Positions 3,189-15,386 of a stretch of 15,922 nucleotides of DNA are shown one piece after another; position 1 is the stretch's first letter, and every line of letters begins with the position of its first letter. The stretch is from positions 1 through 15,922 of IMG/VR virus record IMGVR_UViG_3300025360_000021; one strand, given 5' to 3'. The position numbers were made by a program, and so were the translations under genes. The notes below the pieces were generated by a model. That model made no database searches. It had not been told where the DNA came from and worked only from the letters and a program-made list of their open reading frames with translations.

Positions 3189-3201
3189 ATTTGTTTTTAA
3201 T
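3189..3201 (-). promoter_or_regulatory. Conserved upstream motif ATTAAAAACAAAT
   Basis: Exact copy; overlaps the stop of the upstream gene; 25 nt to ATG 3163. Confidence 0.8.
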
Positions 3202-3450: not shown

Positions 3451-3463
3451 ATTTGTTTTTAAT
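3451..3463 (-). promoter_or_regulatory. Conserved upstream motif ATTAAAAACAAAT
   Basis: Exact copy; 3448-3467 is identical over 20 bp to 3186-3205. Confidence 0.8.
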
Positions 3464-3570: not shown

Positions 3571-3593
3571 AAAAATGAGGATTGGACACGTTG

Positions 3594-3606
3594 ATTAAAA
3601 ATAAAT
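3594..3606 (+). promoter_or_regulatory. Motif variant ATTAAAAATAAAT upstream of the capsid gene
   Basis: 1 mismatch to consensus; 29 nt to ATG 3636. Confidence 0.72.
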
Positions 3607-3635
3607 TAATGTTTGCCTATGGAAACGTGACCAAT

Positions 3636-4022
3636 ATGGCTAGAGGGAGAGGCCTACCTAAGCCTGGAAATTCGAGGCTAGCGAAGTGGCAGGCTAAGTA
3701 CGATCCAACGGTAGTGCAAACAAGGTTCACTGAGGTACAGCCAGTTGCCGTAAGTAGGGCACAGGAGGGTATAGTAAGTATCGCAAACGTGCAATCTCTG
3801 ATAGGTGGCGTACTTGATCAGTACGGTATCGCAGGTCCAATGAGGGCAACATACATCGCCTTCGGCGAAAAGGTTTGGCACGCAACACAAAGGCTAACTG
3901 GGCAAGCGCTTGCTAACGAGGTGAATGGTCTCACGTCATACTTCCAAACCGCATTCGGTGCTAACCCAACAATACTACAGGCAATAGCCCAAGCCCTTGG
4001 CGTCAGCGGTTTGACTTACTAA
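3636..4022 (+). CDS. Major capsid protein, rudivirus (SIRV2 P134-like) fold
   Basis: 128 aa. R.AKWQAK, VL.QYGI.GP.RA.Y..FG.KV, G.AL.N..NGL..Y...AF.ANP.IL match the SIRV coat protein as recalled. Start set at MARGRG. Confidence 0.92.
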   Translation: MARGRGLPKPGNSRLAKWQAKYDPTVVQTRFTEVQPVAVSRAQEGIVSIANVQSLIGGVLDQYGIAGPMRATYIAFGEKVWHATQRLTGQALANEVNGLTSYFQTAFGANPTILQAIAQALGVSGLTY

Positions 4023-4088: not shown

Positions 4089-5138
4089 ATGAAGGTACTC
4101 ATAATACACGCTAAATCACCTAGCCTAGCCACAGTAGCTAATCACTTAGCTAAGGTTGGTAGATCAATAGGGCACGATGTTAGGGTAATGAGTGACTACG
4201 TCCACCAGGACTTTCTTTTCTACAGACCAGACTCAATAATATGGATCGAACCTGTCAATGTTCCTATGAGTTCACGTTATGCAGGGCAGTATTCAACGAA
4301 CAAAATCTACGCAAAGTGGTTAAAGCAATTGTGGTATGGTACGTGTGAGGGTACGCCTTATGGCGAACCTGCCAAGTACCCTGCCTGGTATCAAATAGAC
4401 TTTATTGCAAACAGCTTATTCACGGCTAATAAGCTTACGGAAGTCAATTACCACGTGATTGACATTGTTCATCACGCTTATGATCCAGATGAAAATAAGG
4501 AAGCGATTGAGTATGCGGATTTCCTTAGGAAAAAGGTTGAGCGTGATTTTTCGGGTAAGGTTATATTTGCAATTGCGGAAGGTGCTCATAAGAGAAAAGG
4601 ATGGGAGAAATTGATCCAAGCACTAAAACTAATACCAGACAACATTAGGGAGAAATTCGTGATATTGGCGATAGCACATAAATCCACGATTGATAAGGTA
4701 CTTCCAGATGCGCCTAAAAAGTCAATCTATGTTGTTGGGCAGTTTGGCGAAATGGCTAGGAAGCAAGTCCTAGCCTTATTCGCAATCGCCGATTACGTCT
4801 TGGTTCCATCGCTTGCGGAAGGGTTTGGACTGCCCGTGTTGGAAGCCAATAGTTTGGGCAGGTTGGGTATTTTCGTGAACATGGAACCATACAACGAATT
4901 TGCCGATACTAAAGCCAACATCACATTCCCTTGGGATACAATCAAGGAAGTGATTGACAACGGCGTTGAATTTGAGTTACACGACTACGATCCACAGTAC
5001 CTAGCTGATGCCATTATCGAGGCAGTGGATATGGCTAAGAGCGGTGAATATGAGGAAAGAGCTAAGCGTGCTTACGAAGCCGTTAAGGACATGACAATTA
5101 CAAACTTATACAGCAAAATCATTAAGTACATCGAGTGA
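4089..5138 (+). CDS. Glycosyltransferase, GT-B fold, family 4
   Basis: FIANSLFT, HKRKGWEKLIQA and ADYVLVPSLAEGFGLPVLEANSLG with an intact EX7E motif; adjacent to the capsid gene as in SIRV-type viruses. Confidence 0.93.
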   Translation: MKVLIIHAKSPSLATVANHLAKVGRSIGHDVRVMSDYVHQDFLFYRPDSIIWIEPVNVPMSSRYAGQYSTNKIYAKWLKQLWYGTCEGTPYGEPAKYPAWYQIDFIANSLFTANKLTEVNYHVIDIVHHAYDPDENKEAIEYADFLRKKVERDFSGKVIFAIAEGAHKRKGWEKLIQALKLIPDNIREKFVILAIAHKSTIDKVLPDAPKKSIYVVGQFGEMARKQVLALFAIADYVLVPSLAEGFGLPVLEANSLGRLGIFVNMEPYNEFADTKANITFPWDTIKEVIDNGVEFELHDYDPQYLADAIIEAVDMAKSGEYEERAKRAYEAVKDMTITNLYSKIIKYIE

Positions 5139-6668: not shown

Positions 6669-7310
6669 ATGTCAATATTTGGTGTTCCATTTAAACAGCC
6701 ATTCCAACGACTCAGGGCTAGTGATTGGAATGCGGTAGTCATGGCACTCGATTATTTATACATGATTGATTCACAATTATTCTACGACCTAACGTCTGGA
6801 ACATTCACACCATACTTCGATGAACTATACACAGCTAGTAGTGCATTCTTTGGGAATGAAATCTACGTGGAAGGGTATAAGGTGTTGCACGACTTGGATC
6901 CAATCTACATTGCATCATTCTTACAGGGTGCTGTCAATCAAATCTACAACTACATATCCGTTTACTTAATCAACATACAGAACACGGTTCAACAAATACA
7001 ATCAACGGTTCAAAACATCAAGCTTTATGCTAGCCCAACGGCATTACAATCATTCGTACTTGCCGTAACGACTACGCCAACGACGTTGGTTAGTTCATCA
7101 ACACCGATTAAGCGTGCATTGTTGTTCGTTACTACGGATACGACTTATGTGGTCTATATAGGTGGCGCAAGCGGACAGCACTTCCCAATACCACCAGGTG
7201 GGCAGATTGAGGTTGATGTTTGTGATGCAATACAGATCTATCTTAGGTCTGAGAACTATAGTTACGTCAGGGTGTTGCTTGAATTAACGAGTCAATCAAC
7301 GTGTAATTAA
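6669..7310 (+). CDS. Putative fibre/terminal-structure protein (SDWN motif, short coiled coil, C-terminal beta-sandwich)
   Basis: LRASDWNAVVMAL near the N-terminus, heptads IQNTVQQIQSTVQNI, and a beta-rich end (VVYIGG...FPIPPGGQIEV...IYL...VRVLLE). Confidence 0.72.
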   Translation: MSIFGVPFKQPFQRLRASDWNAVVMALDYLYMIDSQLFYDLTSGTFTPYFDELYTASSAFFGNEIYVEGYKVLHDLDPIYIASFLQGAVNQIYNYISVYLINIQNTVQQIQSTVQNIKLYASPTALQSFVLAVTTTPTTLVSSSTPIKRALLFVTTDTTYVVYIGGASGQHFPIPPGGQIEVDVCDAIQIYLRSENYSYVRVLLELTSQSTCN

Positions 7311-7321
7311 GGCGATAGCTG

Positions 7322-8002
7322 ATGGGTATTCCGTTGCCGTTGGTATCGTGTAGTGATAGTACTCTTTCACTATCCAGTTTTTCGGGAAGCGTTACTCTAA
7401 CATTGCACTGCCCTGGCGATTTGATAGAACCAACGCTGTGGAACAATAGGCGATTATGCTTGGAATACCAGTTGTGCTATCTCGGTTTGTTGATTCAGCA
7501 AATAAGTAATCAAAACCTTGGCGTTGGTGATTCATTAACGAATCAGTACAATAATGTCGTTAGTGAGTTATCGAGTTTGCCACCTGTGACGGCAGGACAG
7601 CCAGTCACTCACGAACAATTCAATGCGATTTGGGATCACATCAACCTTGCGTACAACGTATTGACTAATTTCTTCAGTATCGTGTGGGGCTATGGATCAT
7701 TACAACCTGCCCAGGTCGTTCCATATGAGAACCAGTTATTGTACGTCATCAACAACATACCGAAGAAAAAAACGATGGATCTGATGAAATCGAGTGACTG
7801 GAACGCATTGACACAAGCGTTGTACGCAATTGATCAAATATTACAATACATAAAGCAAAATTGGTTGTTACCTGCCATGCAAGGGCAAGTAACGTTTGCA
7901 GGGGTAAACGTGATTGCGACTACATCATTTAGTTCACCATCGATAACCACATCTATCACTAAGGCATCTACGTCAATGACTACGTCGGCAGGTACTGGAT
8001 AA
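7322..8002 (+). CDS. Putative fibre/structural protein with two SDWN-like repeats and a Ser/Thr-rich C-terminal tag
   Basis: PVTHEQFNAIWDHI and LMKSSDWNALTQAL; ends TTSFSSPSITTSITKASTSMTTSAGTG. Confidence 0.75.
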   Translation: MGIPLPLVSCSDSTLSLSSFSGSVTLTLHCPGDLIEPTLWNNRRLCLEYQLCYLGLLIQQISNQNLGVGDSLTNQYNNVVSELSSLPPVTAGQPVTHEQFNAIWDHINLAYNVLTNFFSIVWGYGSLQPAQVVPYENQLLYVINNIPKKKTMDLMKSSDWNALTQALYAIDQILQYIKQNWLLPAMQGQVTFAGVNVIATTSFSSPSITTSITKASTSMTTSAGTG

Positions 8003-8010
8003 TTACCGTG

Positions 8011-8023
8011 ATTAAAAACAAAT
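8011..8023 (+). promoter_or_regulatory. Conserved upstream motif ATTAAAAACAAAT
   Basis: Exact copy; 25 nt to ATG 8049. Confidence 0.8.
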
Positions 8024-8048
8024 GAGTGATTACGATTCATTGTTTTGT

Positions 8049-8222
8049 ATGAGTAACACGGTGGGCAGTGCAACGTGTAATGTAAAGGATTTAATGACTA
8101 AGCAACAACCATTCATCAAATTCCCAATAGTAACTACGTCCACATCATTTAGTTCACCATCAATATCGGTGGTTATTGCCAAGGCATCCACATCAATGAC
8201 TACGTCGGCAGGTACTGGGTAA
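8049..8222 (+). CDS. 57-aa protein consisting largely of the shared Ser/Thr-rich C-terminal tag
   Basis: ATG 8022 lies inside the motif, whereas ATG 8049 fits the 25-nt spacing. Ends TSFSSPSISVVIAKASTSMTTSAGTG with synonymous divergence from the upstream copy. Confidence 0.75.
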   Translation: MSNTVGSATCNVKDLMTKQQPFIKFPIVTTSTSFSSPSISVVIAKASTSMTTSAGTG

Positions 8223-8230
8223 CTATCGTG

Positions 8231-8243
8231 ATTAAAAACAAAT
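8231..8243 (+). promoter_or_regulatory. Conserved upstream motif ATTAAAAACAAAT
   Basis: Exact copy; 23 nt to GTG 8267. Confidence 0.8.
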
Positions 8244-8266
8244 GATTAAATGCCATTTACATCGAT

Positions 8267-9133
8267 GTGTCAATAGCAATTGAGGAAATAGCAAGGAATT
8301 ACATTAGGTACGGTGCAAAAAGGCTAGGCATCGAGGATAGGTTAAATCGATTCACGGCATACATAAAATCGCTAGATAAATCATGTGCAAGGAATGATGT
8401 TGTATCTCACTACGTGGATTCGGTCTTCCTACCAATCCTGGAAAATAGCGAACAATTAGCCGTTGCCGTAAGCAAAAAAGAAATCCCTAGATATTATAGA
8501 AATAGATTTACTAGGGCACTTAGTACTAGGGATAGGGCTTTCATTAGGTGGTTCCTAAAGAATTACGTAATGAATTACACGGATGTTGATGCTGTGGTTA
8601 GCAATAACTACCAATTACTCCCGTGCTTCTTCGGTTACTGCTTTAATGTTTGCCCTATTGGTGGTGGTACATGTGCCAGCAATGCGGTTTATACATGCCT
8701 ATCCCTCACTGAGTTGCCTCAGACACAGCCTTGCTGTACTGGGACTTATTTTAATGCCTATGGTAAGGTTTTTGACCTGGTTGATAATGCACCATGGGTT
8801 AGTAGCTACAGTACTGGTGGGTTTGGCATTAATACCCAAGTACCTCAATCCGCAGGAACGTTTACACTAACTGGGAGTGTAACGGGACCATCCTGCTTTC
8901 CATCAAGCGGTGTAACCCTTAACCTAGACCTTATTGTGAGTGTTACTGGTTCTACTAGTGGTACATGTGCCAGTAGTTGCCCAAGTGGTGCACCGTGTAT
9001 TACTACAGGTGTTCCGTATTGCCCAGGTACAGTGTATAGTGTAGCTTATTTCCCAGTGCTTTACTACAGCGTTAATCAAACCGTATTGCCTAACTCATCA
9101 TATAGTGTTTGGTGGCAGGTTTCTGTTTCATGA
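8267..9133 (+). CDS. Cys-rich probable virion/attachment protein
   Basis: 288 aa with a basic helical N-terminal third and a Gly/Ser/Thr/Cys-rich beta C-terminal region; 13 Cys; GTCAS occurs twice. Confidence 0.72.
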   Translation: MSIAIEEIARNYIRYGAKRLGIEDRLNRFTAYIKSLDKSCARNDVVSHYVDSVFLPILENSEQLAVAVSKKEIPRYYRNRFTRALSTRDRAFIRWFLKNYVMNYTDVDAVVSNNYQLLPCFFGYCFNVCPIGGGTCASNAVYTCLSLTELPQTQPCCTGTYFNAYGKVFDLVDNAPWVSSYSTGGFGINTQVPQSAGTFTLTGSVTGPSCFPSSGVTLNLDLIVSVTGSTSGTCASSCPSGAPCITTGVPYCPGTVYSVAYFPVLYYSVNQTVLPNSSYSVWWQVSVS

Positions 9134-9169: not shown

Positions 9170-9946
9170 ATGGGTAAGTACAAAATCCTTTTTGAGGGGG
9201 ATCGAACGATTGTGGTTCAACTGAAGGATGGGATTAAGGCGCAAGACTTGGTTGAAAAAGGCGTTTTCATTCAGAAGGCAGATGGTCTTTATGATAAGAA
9301 AGGTAGGAAGGTGATCATCAGCGATAGGGAGTTTTTTCGCATAGGTGAACCGAGACTTGTTGGTTCATGCGGTGGTTCCGTGTATGAGATATTTGATAAC
9401 GTAGTCGTTAGTGCAGGGCATGTGATGGATTGCGTGGACAGTCTCATTGTGGATAACACGAATTATAAACTAGTGAATAAGGAAGTAATGCTTCCTGGCA
9501 CTTATCCGCAATGGTTGTGGTATATATTCGATTTGTTTGGTTACGAACCCTATAGCCCTTATGACTACGGCATAGCCACAATCCAAGCTAATCAATCGAT
9601 CAAGTACAATGCTGATAAGCCGTATCCACACGCTATCTATGTGGCAGGTAATTGCATGTCCAAGTACGATCAGAATTGTTTAGGGATTGCACTTGCAACA
9701 CCGAACATGGAAATATCAGACCTAAATGCCTTAATCGATAGGCAGTTAATGCTTGATTGCACATACTGGAACTACCAAGCAGTTGCGGTTGGTGTTGATG
9801 TAGGTAAAGTATTCGTTAATTACGGCGATGGTGAGTACGCATTACTGAGACCTGCCCTACTAATGCGATTCCTGAATTTATCGGGAATACCAGGTTGTTC
9901 GGGCAGTATGGTTTACCCAACGACGTCGTACCCAGACTTTCCATAA
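9170..9946 (+). CDS. Putative chymotrypsin/trypsin-like serine protease (clan PA)
   Basis: CGGSVY...VVVSAGHV (H84), YDYGIATI (D132) and PGCSGSMV (S244) in canonical H-D-S order. Confidence 0.72.
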   Translation: MGKYKILFEGDRTIVVQLKDGIKAQDLVEKGVFIQKADGLYDKKGRKVIISDREFFRIGEPRLVGSCGGSVYEIFDNVVVSAGHVMDCVDSLIVDNTNYKLVNKEVMLPGTYPQWLWYIFDLFGYEPYSPYDYGIATIQANQSIKYNADKPYPHAIYVAGNCMSKYDQNCLGIALATPNMEISDLNALIDRQLMLDCTYWNYQAVAVGVDVGKVFVNYGDGEYALLRPALLMRFLNLSGIPGCSGSMVYPTTSYPDFP

Positions 9947-10683: not shown

Positions 10684-10923
10684 ATGAGTACTAACGTGAG
10701 TGTTATCATTAGGGAGATACATAGGGCAGACGTTCCTGGGAACACACACTACATAGCAAGCGTGCAATTACTTGATGGCGAAGACGGTTGGGTAAGCCCT
10801 GCCTTTCCAGTTGATTTTCACGACAAACACGAACTAGAACGAAAAATAGCACAGGAAGTAACAATGTACGTCATGGCTAAGCAGAACTTCGGTAAGCACA
10901 TAGCCAGGGGCAGGTGGTTATGA
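10684..10923 (+). CDS. Small hypothetical protein (three strands plus helix), coupled to the large gene
   Basis: 79 aa; its TGA overlaps the next ATG (ATGA at 10920-10923). Confidence 0.78.
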   Translation: MSTNVSVIIREIHRADVPGNTHYIASVQLLDGEDGWVSPAFPVDFHDKHELERKIAQEVTMYVMAKQNFGKHIARGRWL

Positions 10924-13900
10924 GTTACATACCATTCAACATAGATGAAATCAAGGTATTAATCCAGGACAACCTAGCCAACGGCGTAATCGAGAAATCA
11001 TTATCAGAACTGAAGGAAACGGATCTAGCCAAGGCAGTCATCGAGTATGGTGGTTTAACCGATCCAATAGGGCAGTTGGAATCATGGATAGCACAGCAAT
11101 TACAATCGTTCGGTAATTGGTTGGTTCAATCATTCCAGGCAATCATTAGCCCTATCGTTTCGGCTATCAACACGGTATCGAGTTATGTGGCACAGGGGTT
11201 TGCATCGTTATCATCAATGATTACGCAATCGTTCCAGTCATTCGCATCGCAAATAACTAGTGCATTATCGAGTATCCAATCGGCATTCCAATCCTTGGGA
11301 TCAACATTCCAATCATTCGCTAGCCAATTGGGATCAACGTTACAGTCATTCTTTAGCCAAATATCGTATGCATTGACTACGGCATTCTCTCAATTATCGA
11401 GTGCATTCCAGAGTTTGGGATCACAGATCCAAGGTGCATTCTCGGGCATTGTTTCGGCATTGAGTTCCTTAGGATCCCAAGTACAATCGGCATTGAGTAA
11501 CTTCGCCAACGTACTAACACACGTTGTTTTTCCGAGTATCCAGAATTGGATCACGTCAGTCGTTAATTCTGTAATAAGTGGCTTACAGTCATTCGCAAGC
11601 CAGGCACAGACTGTCTTTAGCAACATCGTGAGTGGGATAGAGTCATTCGGCAAGACATTGGAAGGTGTACTAGGCACGTTCTGGAATGATTTACAGAATG
11701 CGTTTAGCACGATCGGTAAGTACGTAACTGGTTTCGTATCATCGATAGAGAAAGGGTTTGAGCAATTCATCAAGGATGTCCAAGCATTCGGTGGCATGAT
11801 ACAATCAACACTATCAAGCATTGGATCCCTCATTCTAAAGGGTTTCGTGGATATCGGCAGGGGATTTGAGTCGTTATTTAGCGATATTCAGAAGGTGTTT
11901 GCGGGATTCGTAAAGTTCATGGAAGGGATACCGAAGATGCTAAGTGAGATCCCAAGTAAGGTCTTTGAGGCTGTGTATAAAGCATTTTTAGACTTCCTAA
12001 AGATCACGGGCATCGATAAGGCGTTTACAATCATTGTTGATTTCTTTAGGAACGTGGCTAAGTTCTTCGAGAATTTGGGAAATAACCCAATCATTAAGGC
12101 GATAATTAAGGACTTTGAGTTGTTCGCATCGGGCATCGAAAATGCATTCACTAATTTCTATAATATATTAATAGGAATATATCACTGGATAGCTAAAGCA
12201 TTGCAATCCTTGGCAACTGATTTCATGAACACCGCTAAGTCGTTGGCAAGCAGTTTCTTGGGTTTGGGTAAGGGATTTACGTCGTTCGTTGTTGATATTA
12301 CTAAGTTCGGTGTTTCATCGCTTTACCTACCTGTGGCGATTGAGACGTTGCCGTTACTAATGACAATGAGTATTTTCAAATCGGAACCGTACATAATCAT
12401 AAAGAGTGGTGTGGATCCCATCAAAGTTGCGATTCCCGATCTAATTAATGCGTTCGGTGCTATATCGCTGATTTCGGCATCCGTGTTCGGTGTCGTGTAC
12501 GGCATAGGTGCATTGATTGAGAAAATCGGATCAGCAACTGGATCCCAAGAAATAGATTTGTCACCATTGGGATTAGGTGTAAAGCTAAGGCTTAACCTAG
12601 GCAAGCTATTGGAACCAATCGGTAACCTACTCGAAAAGGTTGGTGATGAAATAGGCAGGGGCTTAGCACTAAGCGGTTCGTTAGCGTTTATGGAACCGTT
12701 ACGTTATATATGGCGTTACGTGTGGTGGTTGGTGTTCTACGCCATGGGTATGGGAAACATGCCGTTCGAACTACCTGGACATCACGAATTGTTTGACATT
12801 GCCAGGAGGTTCGATGTTACACAAAACATAAACTATATAGCTAACACAATGATATATAGAGGCTTCCCGTACTGGTATATAGCAAAAACAATAGCATTGC
12901 CAACCACGTTCACATCTATAGACGTGGCTAATCAAGCGTTAGGTGATTTCAAAAAGGAAATACAGAATAACTACATCACGGTGGTTGATAAGTTCGGGAA
13001 TACCAGGATCATACCGATTGCACCATTGTTTGAATTGCCAACGACACACGACTTGGTTGAATTCATGCTTAGGGATTTGTTCCTACCTGCCAGGGCACCG
13101 CCTGCCGAACAACCTGCATTAGCATATCAATCATTTATCAAGGCTATGTGGGCACGTGGTGTACCACCAGACGTTGCGTACATGTACTATCTCAGGGCTT
13201 ATGAACTTCCATCAGCAACGCAAGTGTGGGATTTCACAATGAGGGCATTGTCAGGGTTTGCATGGTACGTACCACCGCAGGAAGTACAAACGTTCGCCGA
13301 ATCCGAAGCCAAAATAATCAACGCATTCGTTCCGCAGGTGCCTGCCAAGCTTAACTTCCAGTATAACCTTGTGTTGTTAGCATTGGCAGAGTATCAAAAG
13401 TGGCACGGTAGGGCTCATTTTGCTTGGATTAATGATCCAACGACTGGGAAATCATATACATCTGATGCGTGGTTGATTATTGATCAATCAGCTCACTTAC
13501 TCGATAGGACTGACATTGAGCACCTGGTACGTCATGGCATTTGGGATTACTATCAGAGGAAGTACGGTATTACTAACGAAACAACTATGTACGATGTGTT
13601 GGGTAAGGTTGTGGAACCGCAACCAACGTCACCGATTCAAATATACACGGACTACGTCACGAACGTGTTGATGGCTAGGGGCTTCCATCCGTACGTTGCA
13701 CCGTTGATAGCATTACGTAATGTCTTTGACGTAACGACTGGTGCAAAGACCTTGCTAAGGACAGGTTTGCTGAATCTGATTAGGGAGAATATTGAGTTGA
13801 TACCGATTGCGTTGCAATTAATGAGTCATTTCTTCGATGTGTCCGTGCACGTTGCTTACTTCGATATGTATAACCAAAAGTGGGTAACGGGATGGCTTAA

Positions 13901-15230
13901 TGCACCAGTCCGTTACCTGGATCCCGAGGCTAAGTTACTAGTGCTCAGGGCATTGATGGACAAAGTCAATACGTTTATGAGGTATATGTTCCGTGCACTG
14001 GAATACGGCGTTAGGGATTACCTGGTTGGTGTTAATGACTCAATAAACTACATGGTAGGGTACGTAAAAGACGTGTTGGATAAGTACTATGCACCGCTCT
14101 ATAAATCCATAACAGGCGTTGAAATGCACCTAACATGGGATTCAGCATTTAACGACGCCATAGCTAAGTACTTTGAGATAGAGCAACTGATTGGTACATT
14201 CCGTAGAATTAGGTATTATGCCAGGTATGCGTTATATAGGATCCTAGGGATCATAGGCATGGGGCTTATTCCAAAGACAGAGATTCCTAAGTATATTGAT
14301 GAATTAACAACATTAATGAAAGAAACACCACAAGCAAAGGAAGTATTCATGTTCATTTCAGACCTGGTTTATCACAGATACTTGCTTAGGAACTATGAAA
14401 CGATGGTTAGGGTTTGGTTGGGCAGGCATGCAATGACAATCGATCAAGCCTTGCAAACATTGTTGGCACAGAACATAGATCCAGACTACGCAAAAGCCTT
14501 AGTCAATGCATACGCTAGCCCGTATTATCCAACGATTGTGCAATTGATTGTAATGAGTGAGTACAACCCTGCCTTTTTGGGTAAGCTAGGGCAGGTAATA
14601 CAACTAATGAGGATTCCACAAGATTGGGCACAGATTTGGCAAGATTACGCATACATAAGGGCTTATGTTAGGTGGTTCATACGTGCATTGAATGAGGTCG
14701 TTACTGTGGTTTCCAGGATACCACTGACTGTGAAAATAGTCATGCCAATGACGCAGGGCAATAAGACGGTTACATTGCAGGATGTTGTGAATGATATGTT
14801 TAAGCAAGCACAAGCGTTTGGTTTTGATAGTACTAAGCTTAGCTTCGTTAAGGAACTAATAGACTTTAGGTACGTACTTACTCAATACAGGAATTCAATC
14901 CCAACGCCGTGGCATGCATTGAATTTAACATACTACCTGCCAGACCCTGACACGTTCATAGACAACCTATCACAGAACTGGATCATATCGCAATACGGAG
15001 TATCACTAATCAAGACACTGGCAAGGTTTAGGAAGTACGGCAGGTGGATGTTCGAGACCGTGTACTGGGCAGTCAGGGCTTATGCACGTGGTTACATGGC
15101 AGGGCAAGACCTATACCAATTCTTGCAATCCCTACAATCGTTTGGATTGTCTAAGTACGACATCGAGATGATTAGGAACTGGGCATTCGCAATGAGTTGT
15201 TACTACGGTGCATGCCAATACCCATGGTAA
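10920..15230 (+). CDS. Large virion protein with tape-measure-like amphipathic repeats, candidate terminal fibre/end-structure protein
   Basis: About 1436 aa; GGTGG SD before ATG 10920. N-terminal 7/11-residue F/L-Q-S repeats, a hydrophobic middle segment and a helical-repeat C-terminal half. Size and position are analogous to the largest rudivirus protein (SIRV2 P1070). Confidence 0.8.
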   Translation: MSYIPFNIDEIKVLIQDNLANGVIEKSLSELKETDLAKAVIEYGGLTDPIGQLESWIAQQLQSFGNWLVQSFQAIISPIVSAINTVSSYVAQGFASLSSMITQSFQSFASQITSALSSIQSAFQSLGSTFQSFASQLGSTLQSFFSQISYALTTAFSQLSSAFQSLGSQIQGAFSGIVSALSSLGSQVQSALSNFANVLTHVVFPSIQNWITSVVNSVISGLQSFASQAQTVFSNIVSGIESFGKTLEGVLGTFWNDLQNAFSTIGKYVTGFVSSIEKGFEQFIKDVQAFGGMIQSTLSSIGSLILKGFVDIGRGFESLFSDIQKVFAGFVKFMEGIPKMLSEIPSKVFEAVYKAFLDFLKITGIDKAFTIIVDFFRNVAKFFENLGNNPIIKAIIKDFELFASGIENAFTNFYNILIGIYHWIAKALQSLATDFMNTAKSLASSFLGLGKGFTSFVVDITKFGVSSLYLPVAIETLPLLMTMSIFKSEPYIIIKSGVDPIKVAIPDLINAFGAISLISASVFGVVYGIGALIEKIGSATGSQEIDLSPLGLGVKLRLNLGKLLEPIGNLLEKVGDEIGRGLALSGSLAFMEPLRYIWRYVWWLVFYAMGMGNMPFELPGHHELFDIARRFDVTQNINYIANTMIYRGFPYWYIAKTIALPTTFTSIDVANQALGDFKKEIQNNYITVVDKFGNTRIIPIAPLFELPTTHDLVEFMLRDLFLPARAPPAEQPALAYQSFIKAMWARGVPPDVAYMYYLRAYELPSATQVWDFTMRALSGFAWYVPPQEVQTFAESEAKIINAFVPQVPAKLNFQYNLVLLALAEYQKWHGRAHFAWINDPTTGKSYTSDAWLIIDQSAHLLDRTDIEHLVRHGIWDYYQRKYGITNETTMYDVLGKVVEPQPTSPIQIYTDYVTNVLMARGFHPYVAPLIALRNVFDVTTGAKTLLRTGLLNLIRENIELIPIALQLMSHFFDVSVHVAYFDMYNQKWVTGWLNAPVRYLDPEAKLLVLRALMDKVNTFMRYMFRALEYGVRDYLVGVNDSINYMVGYVKDVLDKYYAPLYKSITGVEMHLTWDSAFNDAIAKYFEIEQLIGTFRRIRYYARYALYRILGIIGMGLIPKTEIPKYIDELTTLMKETPQAKEVFMFISDLVYHRYLLRNYETMVRVWLGRHAMTIDQALQTLLAQNIDPDYAKALVNAYASPYYPTIVQLIVMSEYNPAFLGKLGQVIQLMRIPQDWAQIWQDYAYIRAYVRWFIRALNEVVTVVSRIPLTVKIVMPMTQGNKTVTLQDVVNDMFKQAQAFGFDSTKLSFVKELIDFRYVLTQYRNSIPTPWHALNLTYYLPDPDTFIDNLSQNWIISQYGVSLIKTLARFRKYGRWMFETVYWAVRAYARGYMAGQDLYQFLQSLQSFGLSKYDIEMIRNWAFAMSCYYGACQYPW

Positions 15231-15275: not shown

Positions 15276-15386
15276 ATGGGTAAGTCAGGACTACCTAAGG
15301 ATGGTAAGTCCAGGTTCGAAAAGTGGTTAGCAAAGTATGATCCAGAGGTGATAAGGAAACGTTTTGAGGAATCAATGCAGGGATAA
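15276..15386 (+). CDS. 36-aa mini-paralogue of the major capsid protein N-terminal DNA-binding arm
   Basis: MGKSGLPKDGKSRFEKWLAKYDPEVIRKRFEESMQG; 18/28 identical to capsid residues 6-33; has its own motif copy; absent from the supplied ORF track. Confidence 0.8.
   Translation: MGKSGLPKDGKSRFEKWLAKYDPEVIRKRFEESMQG

What the first reader, a model, noticed from the sequence alone, without database searches (positions are those of the whole stretch)
7922..8245. Two adjacent proteins share a conserved C-terminal tag ending KASTSMTTSAGTG
Seen: both ORFs end TSFSSPSI-xxx-I-x-KASTSMTTSAGTG-stop. Coding differences outside a central 5-codon patch are synonymous (tcg/tca, tct/tcc, acg/aca, gga/ggg), and the second protein is little more than the tag. 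Inference: the tag is under selection as a portable signal. Options are a beta-strand that inserts into a common partner, a glycosylation acceptor for the two viral GT4 enzymes, or a substrate for the nearby protease. It is a second case in this window of a mini-gene copying one terminus of a structural protein.
Basis: partly seen in the sequence, partly recalled or inferred. Interest (0 to 1): 0.62.

Follow-up and report, generated by a model that had tools for sequence, protein, structure and literature searches.

The report
Mini-protein copying its partner's tail
In an uncultured rod-shaped-virus relative from acidic hot springs, a tiny conserved gene next to a 226-residue protein carries a copy of that protein's Ser/Thr-rich tail; recombination keeps the two tails alike, and the small protein is predicted to dock on the large one, which is new but of specialist interest.

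Summary
ORF A (7322-8002, 226 aa) and ORF B (8022-8222; probable start 8049, 57 aa) end in the same 27-residue tail. 22 of 27 residues are identical, and most differences outside a 5-codon patch are synonymous.

The window is about half of a rudivirus-like archaeal virus genome. It has a SIRV-type coat protein and GT4 glycosyltransferases, and a relative carries inverted terminal repeats.

B is a genuine gene:
- It sits directly after A in every related hot-spring locus with enough DNA, except one.
- Only its sense frame is open in all 49 distinct versions.
- Its N-terminal peptide is under purifying selection.

The A and B tails co-vary lineage by lineage. Some genomes hold 59-60 nt copies that are 100% identical, and in this window the two tail variants are swapped relative to the nearest relatives. 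This shows concerted evolution by recombination together with protein-level constraint.

B is more than the tag. Its N-terminal peptide, with one Cys, is predicted to dock on A's helical bundle (ipSAE 0.76, best control 0.00), next to A's Cys52 and next to where A's tail leaves the bundle.

The tag is not portable: there are only two copies per genome. What the paired tails bind is unknown. Glycosylation, cleavage and expression could not be tested.

The parts
6669..7310 (+). p213, a conserved rudiviral protein (phrog_7221). It lies upstream of A with only a 12-nt gap and no promoter motif between them, so it is probably co-transcribed with A.
7322..8002 (+). Gene A, 226 aa. Residues 37-180 form a five-helix bundle. 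The N-terminal 37 residues and the tail (184-226) are predicted unstructured in the monomer. Four invariant Cys: 10, 30, 46, 52.
7919..8002 (+). Tail of A (residues 200-226) plus stop codon: the first copy of the shared tag.
7910..8037 (+). DNA direct repeat, copy 1 (tail, stop codon, promoter-like motif).
   Evidence: D1: 128 nt, 80%
8011..8023 (+). Promoter-like motif ATTAAAAACAAAT serving B. It lies 38 nt before ATG 8049, matching the 36-40 nt spacing seen at the other genes.
8022..8222 (+). ORF B, at most 66 aa. The likely product is 8049-8222 (57 aa).
8049..8105 (+). B N-terminal docking peptide (residues 10-28 of the 66-aa ORF; invariant Cys19 at 8076-8078). Predicted to contact A residues 45-60, 80-84 and 174-185.
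8139..8222 (+). Tail of B (residues 40-66) plus stop codon: the second copy of the shared tag.
8130..8257 (+). DNA direct repeat, copy 2.
8231..8243 (+). Promoter-like motif serving gene C, 36 nt before GTG 8267.
8267..9133 (+). Gene C, 288 aa: a helical N-domain plus a Cys-rich beta-sandwich. It is exchanged between lineages, either together with A's tail and B or on its own.
9170..9946 (+). p258, a candidate trypsin-like serine protease (motifs SAGHV and GCSGS).
   Evidence: lead only; no Pfam hit

Best explanation
SHOWN. A and B are two real, co-conserved neighbouring genes of an uncultured rudivirus-like lineage from hot springs. B has its own promoter-like motif. It consists of a conserved N-terminal peptide of about 20-30 aa with a single invariant Cys, followed by a copy of A's C-terminal tail. 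The tail is one to three hydrophobic, strand-like units followed by an S/T-rich end of the type STSMTTSAG and a few variable residues. The two tail copies evolve in concert. Non-allelic recombination or gene conversion between the adjacent direct repeats (tail, stop codon, promoter motif) repeatedly homogenises or swaps them. Purifying selection acts on the protein sequence of both.

PREDICTED. B's N-terminal peptide docks on A's helical bundle. B Cys19 lies against A Cys52, so a disulfide is possible. B residues 23-28 lie against A residues 174-185, which is where A's own tail leaves the bundle.

INFERRED. The A-B heterodimer therefore presents two matched tails side by side. These tails most likely act together as a paired strand or attachment element that joins the complex to a further partner, either another virion-end protein such as C or a host surface structure. 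The segment made of A's tail, B and C behaves as an exchangeable cassette, like the distal host-recognition modules of tailed phages.
For: B is real. It is present after A in 58 loci (plus L049) and in 7 more found by a motif scan. Only the sense frame is open in all 49 distinct versions; the other five frames have stops in 32-49 of 49. The N-terminal block has pS 0.65 and pN 0.29. The promoter spacing points to the 57-aa form, and that form was independently gene-called.

Concerted evolution. End-anchored tail identity is 0.56-0.58 within a genome against 0.24-0.26 across genomes, with 0 of 5000 permutations reaching the observed value. Within-genome tail repeats are 76-100% identical at DNA level: L018, L019 and L021 hold 59-60 nt at 100%, and L017 holds 97 nt at 96%. 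Paralogue pS is 0.30 against orthologue pS of 0.61-0.64. The window's B tail is nearest to the relatives' A tails (4-7 differences in 81 nt), and the window's A tail is nearest to their B tails (10-13 differences).

Protein-level constraint. pN/pS is 0.25-0.38 on the terminal 9 codons.

Docking. Complex prediction gave ipSAE 0.76 (three runs: 0.73-0.79) against a best control of 0.00. That mark was reached by 58 of 80 solved complexes and 2 of 110 mismatched pairs. The runs share at least 56% of contacts, and the partner pLDDT is at least 56. The interface is B residues 10-28 with A residues 19-22, 45-60, 80-84 and 174-185, and the top pair is A:52 with B:19. B has exactly one Cys in 44 of 49 versions, and A has four in 46 of 49.

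Natural recombinants agree. L016 shares at least 90% nt identity with the window up to A nt ~500, then 42-78% through A's tail, B and most of C. A residues ~177-190 and B residues 23-30 change together. In the A monomer the tail is unstructured (pLDDT below 50), as expected for a segment that folds only on a partner.
Against: The tails themselves are not in the confident part of the predicted interface, so pairing of the two tails is inference. No partner for the tails was identified. Tail lengths in A and B vary independently: all four long/short combinations occur. This argues against strict in-register pairing over the full length. The complex score is a model's own confidence, obtained with my own alignments, and it is not a measurement. 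One contig (L027) lacks B, so B may be dispensable, or that contig may be a collapsed assembly. Expression is untested, since no RNA run holds the region. That A, B and C are virion-end proteins rests on context only; there is no fold or family match.
Confidence: 0.5

Rival explanations
1. The tail is a Ser/Thr-rich acceptor for O-linked glycans, a mucin-like brush added by the viral GT4 enzymes or by host enzymes. A and B share it because both need to be glycosylated or shielded.
For: The tails are 60-64% Ser/Thr, the richest 25-residue stretches among the window's main ORFs. Two GT4 genes lie in the window. The tail is predicted unstructured.
Against: GT4 genes next to the coat protein gene are core rudivirus genes and are present in ARV1, which lacks A and B. 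So there is no specific co-occurrence. The tail contains no Asn and therefore no N-glycosylation sequon. The hydrophobic strand-like units (such as VVIAKA, IIQVY, IVVATV) and the nearly invariant Ala-Gly are not explained by a glycan acceptor role. This reading is compatible with the main explanation rather than exclusive of it.
Confidence: 0.2
2. The shared tail has no common function. A partial tandem duplication created B's 3' end. Gene conversion between the adjacent repeats, helped by the conserved promoter motif just downstream, keeps a loosely constrained linker alike in both genes.
For: The repeat includes non-coding DNA: the stop codon and the promoter motif. Some genomes hold 100% identical copies. 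Tails are swapped. Recombination breakpoints map to the tail regions. Tail length is highly polymorphic.
Against: Replacements are strongly under-represented relative to synonymous changes both between paralogues and among orthologues. The terminal motif persists in the distant clade, where the DNA repeat has shrunk to about 20-40 nt at 76-97% identity. The ORF and the stop position of B are kept in all 49 distinct versions.
Confidence: 0.15
3. The conserved Ser-Ala-Gly near the end is a processing site. The neighbouring trypsin-like protease p258, or a host enzyme, trims or matures both proteins there.
For: Ala-Gly is nearly invariant, while the 1-5 residues after it vary in length and sequence (TG, VG, VK, TGKPP, WQTK, AKSA). 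p258 looks trypsin-like.
Against: No cleavage evidence exists. The protease assignment is only a lead, since Pfam and PDB sequence searches were blank. The post-AG residues also co-vary between A and B, which would be unnecessary if they were discarded, although gene conversion alone could explain it.
Confidence: 0.1
4. The conservation is at DNA or RNA level. The sequence would be an upstream promoter element or terminator for the next gene, or an antisense gene, and the peptide likeness is a by-product.
For: Each copy lies just upstream of a promoter-like motif. Antisense ORFs of 79 and 53 aa overlap the tails.
Against: The other nine promoter motifs in the window are not preceded by tail-like sequence. 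Variation falls mainly on synonymous sites. The antisense frame whose third codon positions coincide with those of the sense frame has stops in 32 of 49 versions, and the other antisense frames in 48-49 of 49. No terminator-like hairpin was found.
Confidence: 0.04

Closest known systems
Nested in-frame gene pairs of phages, in which a short protein shares the C-terminus of a longer assembly protein (for example lambda C/Nu3, phiX174 A/A*). Cited from my own knowledge.
   Same: A small protein carries the same C-terminal end as a larger neighbour, and so presumably the same interaction surface.
   Different: Here the short protein is a separate, non-overlapping gene in a different frame, with its own promoter and its own N-terminal peptide. 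The shared end is a duplicated DNA segment kept alike by recombination, not a single stretch of DNA read twice.
Tail-fibre distal part plus downstream small assembly or accessory gene cassettes of tailed phages (Tfa/gp38-type). Cited from my own knowledge.
   Same: A small gene sits immediately downstream. Its product is predicted to bind the upstream protein near its C-terminal end. The C-terminal part, the small gene and the next gene are exchanged between lineages as a cassette.
   Different: There is no sequence or family match for B. Tfa-type proteins do not copy the fibre's terminus. It is not shown that A is a fibre or adsorption protein.
Concerted evolution of adjacent paralogous repeats by gene conversion or unequal recombination (a general mechanism).
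   Same: Within-genome copies are more alike than orthologues, including at synonymous sites. Identical tracts, swaps and a possible pop-out deletion occur.
   Different: The converted tract is only about 20-115 nt. It spans the end of a coding region plus a promoter, and it links two otherwise unrelated proteins that are predicted to bind each other.
Donor-strand complementation (chaperone-usher pili; Sulfolobus 'thread' filaments). Cited from my own knowledge.
   Same: A terminal extension of mixed hydrophobic and small polar residues, unstructured on its own, that could complete a partner's beta-sheet.
   Different: This is purely an analogy. No acceptor groove, partner or homology was found or tested.
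Rudiviridae (ARV1, SIRV, SRV, SMRV1), as the virus background.
   Same: SIRV-type coat protein (PF12193). A GT4 gene beside the coat protein gene. A homologue of ARV1 ORF318 (p213). A large protein that shares a region with the rudiviral large structural proteins. Inverted terminal repeats in a relative.
   Different: No DNA match to any deposited virus. A, B and C have no detectable homologues in deposited rudiviruses. There is an extra trypsin-like gene.

Membership tests
Rudiviridae / Ligamenvirales (virus background) | SIRV2-type major coat protein | tested here: met
   3582-4022 matches PF12193 Sulf_coat_C at 90.0 bits (cut-off 25.2), E = 1.9e-25.
Rudiviridae / Ligamenvirales (virus background) | Linear dsDNA genome with inverted terminal repeats | tested here: inconclusive
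   The window is a fragment (CheckV 47%). The related record G001 (26,805 bp; A 75% identical) is classed as having inverted terminal repeats.
Rudiviridae / Ligamenvirales (virus background) | Large terminal-fibre-type structural protein (SIRV P1070 / ARV1 ORF1115 type) | tested here: inconclusive
   10914-15230 matches phrog_7334 (E = 5.9e-24) and rudiviral structural proteins over residues ~283-663 only.
Rudiviridae versus Lipothrixviridae | One coat protein (Rudiviridae) rather than two paralogous ones (Lipothrixviridae) | tested here: inconclusive
   The half-genome window holds one full coat gene plus a 36-aa ORF that copies its N-terminal part.
Phage tail-fibre assembly proteins (Tfa / Caudo_TAP) | Match to the family profile | tested here: not met
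   B has no Pfam or PHROG hit at E up to 0.1 and 0.01 respectively.
Nested C-terminal gene pair | The short product is read from the same DNA and frame as the long one | tested here: not met
   B lies downstream of A's stop codon, in another frame, and has its own promoter-like motif.
Trypsin-like (PA clan) serine protease, for p258 | Family profile match and a His/Asp/Ser triad | tested here: inconclusive
   No Pfam hit and no PDB sequence hit. Language-model features give 0.93 to trypsin clusters, which is a lead only. The SAGHV and GCSGS motifs are visible in the sequence.
GT4 glycosyltransferase | Profile match above the curated cut-off | tested here: met
   4089-5138: PF00534 at 42.2 bits (cut-off 26.4). 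398-1480 on the minus strand: PF20706 at 27.7 bits (cut-off 26), marginal.
Donor-strand complementation systems | An acceptor subunit with an open groove, and strand insertion | not testable with these tools
   Only one complex job was available and it was used on A+B. No model coordinates are returned.

The most novel reading that the evidence does not exclude
B is a 'tail doubler'. This would be a dedicated mini-subunit that disulfide-locks onto A and adds a second, recombination-matched copy of A's C-terminal strand. The twin strands would together plug into a partner by strand complementation, either a host pilus or thread subunit or a virion-end protein. The module made of A's tail, B and C would then be the exchangeable host-recognition cassette of this virus lineage. 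This would be a previously undescribed way for a virus to build and diversify an attachment element.
Probability: 0.15. Interest if true: 0.75.

Novelty: new variant of a known kind. Interest (0 to 1): 0.5.

Why it matters
Very little is known about the end structures and adsorption proteins of filamentous archaeal viruses. This work defines a conserved three-gene module (A, mini-gene B, C) in an uncultured lineage that recurs across many hot-spring metagenomes. It gives a concrete, testable heterodimer model, including a specific Cys52-Cys19 contact. It documents short-tract concerted evolution that joins the ends of two otherwise unrelated proteins predicted to interact. It also shows that gene callers mostly miss B: only 6 database entries were found, against about 50 distinct genomic versions. 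Mini-genes of this sort are therefore probably under-counted in archaeal viromes.

Tried and rejected
Searches that gave nothing:
- No DNA match (megablast) and no tblastn match for A in deposited phage and archaeal virus records.
- Pfam and PHROGs are blank for A, B and C.
- PDB sequence searches with the A profile, C and p258 are blank.
- The AF2 model of A is a generic helical bundle with no significant PDB match. The atlas feature search for A gave 0.77, which is uninformative.
- C folds confidently, but the best PDB match has Z 3.8. There are only weak BFVD matches to uncharacterised lipothrixvirus proteins.
- No sequencing run recorded as RNA holds the region, so expression could not be examined and read laying was not used.

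Ideas tested and dropped:
- B as a 'mini-A' (A's N-terminus joined to its tail). hhalign aligns only the tails (probability 88%), so this was rejected.
- A or B as homologues of ARV1 ORF318 or ORF74b. Rejected.
- A third tag copy elsewhere. None was found in the window. The DNA pattern for the terminal motif gave no third match in the 26.8-kb relative. No other small tagged protein was found.
- Antisense coding, or a DNA-level element. Rejected.
- Read-through from A into B. Rejected, because the frames differ.

Full report
WHAT THE WINDOW IS.
The window is a complete IMG/VR contig of 15,922 bp, estimated 47% complete. It encodes:
- a SIRV-type coat protein (3582-4022, PF12193, E = 1.9e-25);
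- two GT4 glycosyltransferases;
- p213 (6669-7310), a homologue of a protein conserved across rudiviruses (phrog_7221; tblastn hits in 42 records of Sulfolobales rod-shaped viruses);
- a 1438-aa protein that shares a region with rudiviral large structural proteins.

No deposited virus matches at DNA level. A relative (G001, 26,805 bp) has inverted terminal repeats. All related DNA comes from hot-spring metagenomes. The motif ATTAAAAACAAAT occurs 11 times against 0.13 expected. Every copy lies ahead of a gene in the correct orientation, and at eight genes it begins 36-40 nt before the start codon. I read it as the promoter (TATA-box region) of leaderless transcription units. That reading is inference from archaeal promoter architecture.

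THE OBSERVATION.
It is confirmed. ORF A (7322-8002) and ORF B (8022-8222) end in the same 27-residue tail, with 22 of 27 residues identical.
- Ten codons differ. Five are synonymous.
- Four replacements cluster in a 5-codon patch (TTSIT against SVVIA). One more replacement is at the first tail codon.
- Outside the patch there are about 5 synonymous changes on 18.7 sites, against 1 replacement on 47.3 sites.
- At DNA level the repeat is 128 nt and 80% identical (7910-8037 and 8130-8257). It includes the stop codon and the promoter motif of the next gene.

B IS A REAL GENE AND MORE THAN THE TAG.
A has 51 metagenomic homologues. They share a conserved body of about 195 aa and a tail of variable length, with insertions or deletions of 16-residue units. 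A scan of metagenome contigs returned 70 loci.
- In 58 of these loci a small ORF of 40-69 aa follows A after 11-47 nt. A motif scan found seven more.
- This holds down to the most divergent locus, L067, where A is 44% identical.
- Only L027 goes straight from A to C. That could be a pop-out between the two direct repeats or an assembly collapse.
- Among 49 distinct B sequences only the sense frame is always open. The other five frames carry stops in 32-49 of 49.
- The B alignment shows a conserved N-terminal segment with an invariant Cys, Leu and Thr (pattern ..C....L.TKQ) ahead of the tail. A 16-codon block around the Cys has pS 0.65 and pN 0.29.
- hhalign finds no likeness between B and A outside the tails.

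Four things place B's real start at ATG 8049, giving 57 aa: the promoter spacing; relatives whose B begins at the equivalent Met; an independent 57-aa gene call; and the start of the predicted interface at residue 10.

WHAT KEEPS THE TAILS ALIKE.
The tails differ between lineages, yet A and B of one genome match each other. Examples are endings of the types SSSVGWKTG, SSSAGWQTK, SSTASWEQK, TTAGTGKPS and TSAGTGKPP.
- End-anchored identity is 0.56-0.58 within genomes and 0.24-0.26 across genomes, with 0 of 5000 permutations reaching the observed value. Without concerted evolution, paralogues from an old duplication should be no more alike within a genome than across genomes.
- Within-genome repeats range from 100% identity (L018, L019, L021: 59-60 nt, running about 11 nt past the stop) and 96% (L017, 97 nt), down to about 20-40 nt at 76-97% in the distant clade.
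- On the terminal nine codons, synonymous divergence between paralogues is 0.30 against 0.61-0.64 between orthologues. pN/pS is 0.25-0.38 throughout.
- The window's B tail is closest to the A tails of its nearest relatives (4-7 differences in 81 nt). Its A tail is closest to their B tails (10-13 differences). The two tail variants have therefore changed places.
- The last 15-20 nt are identical, or differ at one base, within each of five related genomes, and they differ between genomes.

The conclusion is repeated non-allelic recombination or gene conversion, together with purifying selection on the peptide. The tag is not portable. It occurs twice in the window. The DNA pattern for its terminal motif occurs twice in the ITR-bearing relative. 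No other small tagged protein turned up.

HOW A AND B RELATE PHYSICALLY (PREDICTION).
The AF2 model of A gives a five-helix bundle at residues 37-180, with block-mean pLDDT mostly 63-92. The conserved Cys-bearing N-terminus and the tail both fall below pLDDT 50. No fold or family match exists.

The single complex job was run on A plus B and passed.
- ipSAE was 0.76 (runs 0.73, 0.79, 0.76) against a best control of 0.00.
- That mark was reached by 58 of 80 solved complexes and 2 of 110 mismatched pairs.
- The runs share at least 56% of contacts, and partner pLDDT is at least 56.
- My own alignments were used, so the calibration counts hold only roughly.

The confident interface does not involve the tails. 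It is B residues 10-28 against A residues 19-22, 45-60, 80-84 and 174-185. The best pair is A Cys52 with B Cys19. B has exactly one Cys in 44 of 49 versions; the rest have a second Cys only in the doubtful N-terminal extension. A has four Cys in 46 of 49. B residues 23-28 sit against A residues 174-185, where A's tail departs, so the two tails would emerge side by side.

Natural recombinants fit this model. L016 and the window are at least 90% identical in DNA from p213 to about nt 500 of A. Identity then falls to 42-78% through A's tail, B and most of C. A residues ~177-190 and B residues 23-30 change together, while the part of B that contacts the unchanged helix stays similar. Conversely, L055 is 47-78% identical to the window across p213, A and B, but 70-92% identical in C, with the breakpoint at the B/C junction. 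The tail-plus-promoter repeats thus sit at module boundaries.

FUNCTION OF THE TAILS (INFERENCE).
Each tail has three parts:
- one to three hydrophobic, strand-like units (for example VVIAKA, IIQVY, IVVATV);
- an S/T-rich stretch ending in a nearly invariant Ala-Gly;
- 1-5 variable residues.

The tail is unstructured in the monomer, under purifying selection, and duplicated on a docking subunit. My preferred reading is a paired strand or attachment element of an A-B complex that engages a further partner. The segment made of A's tail, B and C would be an exchangeable distal module. C folds confidently (pLDDT 89) into a helical domain plus a Cys-rich beta-sandwich. It has no PDB match and only weak matches to uncharacterised lipothrixvirus proteins.

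Independent length variation of the two tails argues against strict full-length pairing. O-glycosylation of the tails is compatible with this reading but is not specifically supported: the GT4 genes are core rudivirus genes also found in ARV1, which lacks A and B, and the tail has no Asn. Cleavage after Ala-Gly by the trypsin-like p258 is possible but untested. DNA-level or antisense explanations are rejected.

VERDICT.
The arrangement is a new variant of known themes, namely small accessory subunits, shared termini and concerted evolution. It is of moderate interest to archaeal virologists. Expression, binding and tail function still need experiments.

Noticed in passing
window 15276-15386 (+), compared with 3582-4022: A 36-aa ORF with its own promoter motif (15237) copies residues 24-51 of the coat protein (64% identity over 28 aa, E = 4e-13). 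It is conserved in the relative genome G001 (88% identity, open frame of 44 aa).
   Followed up: partly
window 3189-3201(-), 3451-3463(-), 3594, 4052, 6631, 8011, 8231, 9133, 9946, 10644, 15237 (+): The motif ATTAAAAACAAAT occurs 11 times (0.13 expected). All copies are intergenic and correctly oriented, and at eight genes the motif begins 36-40 nt before the start codon. It is probably the viral promoter of leaderless transcripts. A (7322) has none and probably shares p213's.
   Followed up: partly
window 7322-9133 compared with L016 and L055: Strong mosaicism. One breakpoint lies at the body/tail junction of A (about nt 500-560 of A). Another lies at the B/C junction. C can be 82% identical where A is 50% identical, and C can be 51% identical where A is 88% identical.
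   Followed up: yes
L027 960-1398: This is the only locus where A is followed directly by C, with B missing. It could be a natural pop-out between the two tail repeats or an assembly collapse of the repeat.
   Followed up: partly
window 7754-7840 (A residues 145-173) compared with 6681-6776 (p213 residues 5-36): A shared 'SDWNA..AL' motif between A and the N-terminus of the rudivirus-conserved p213 (41% identity over 29 columns, hhalign E = 3e-4, probability 39%). This may indicate a distant paralogous relationship.
   Followed up: partly
window 8267-9133: Protein C is predicted with high confidence (pLDDT 89, pTM 0.87) as a helical domain plus a beta-sandwich with 10 invariant Cys. It has no PDB match (best Z 3.8). 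Weak BFVD matches point to uncharacterised proteins of lipothrixviruses (AFV1 ORF274, SIFV gp54-like).
   Followed up: partly
window 9170-9946: p258 carries the motifs SAGHV and GCSGS, and its language-model features point to trypsin-like proteases (0.93). Pfam and PDB sequence searches are blank.
   Followed up: partly
window 10914-15230: The 1438-aa protein has an N-terminal ~400 residues of Ser/Gln/Phe-rich helical repeats that match phage tape-measure profiles. Residues ~390-660 match the rudiviral large structural proteins (phrog_7334).
   Followed up: no
window 7834-8073 (-) and 8030-8191 (-): Antisense ORFs of 79 and 53 aa overlap the two tails, in the frame whose third codon positions coincide with those of the sense frame. 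That frame carries stops in 32 of 49 related B sequences, so these are by-products of the Ser/Thr/Val codon usage and not genes.
   Followed up: yes
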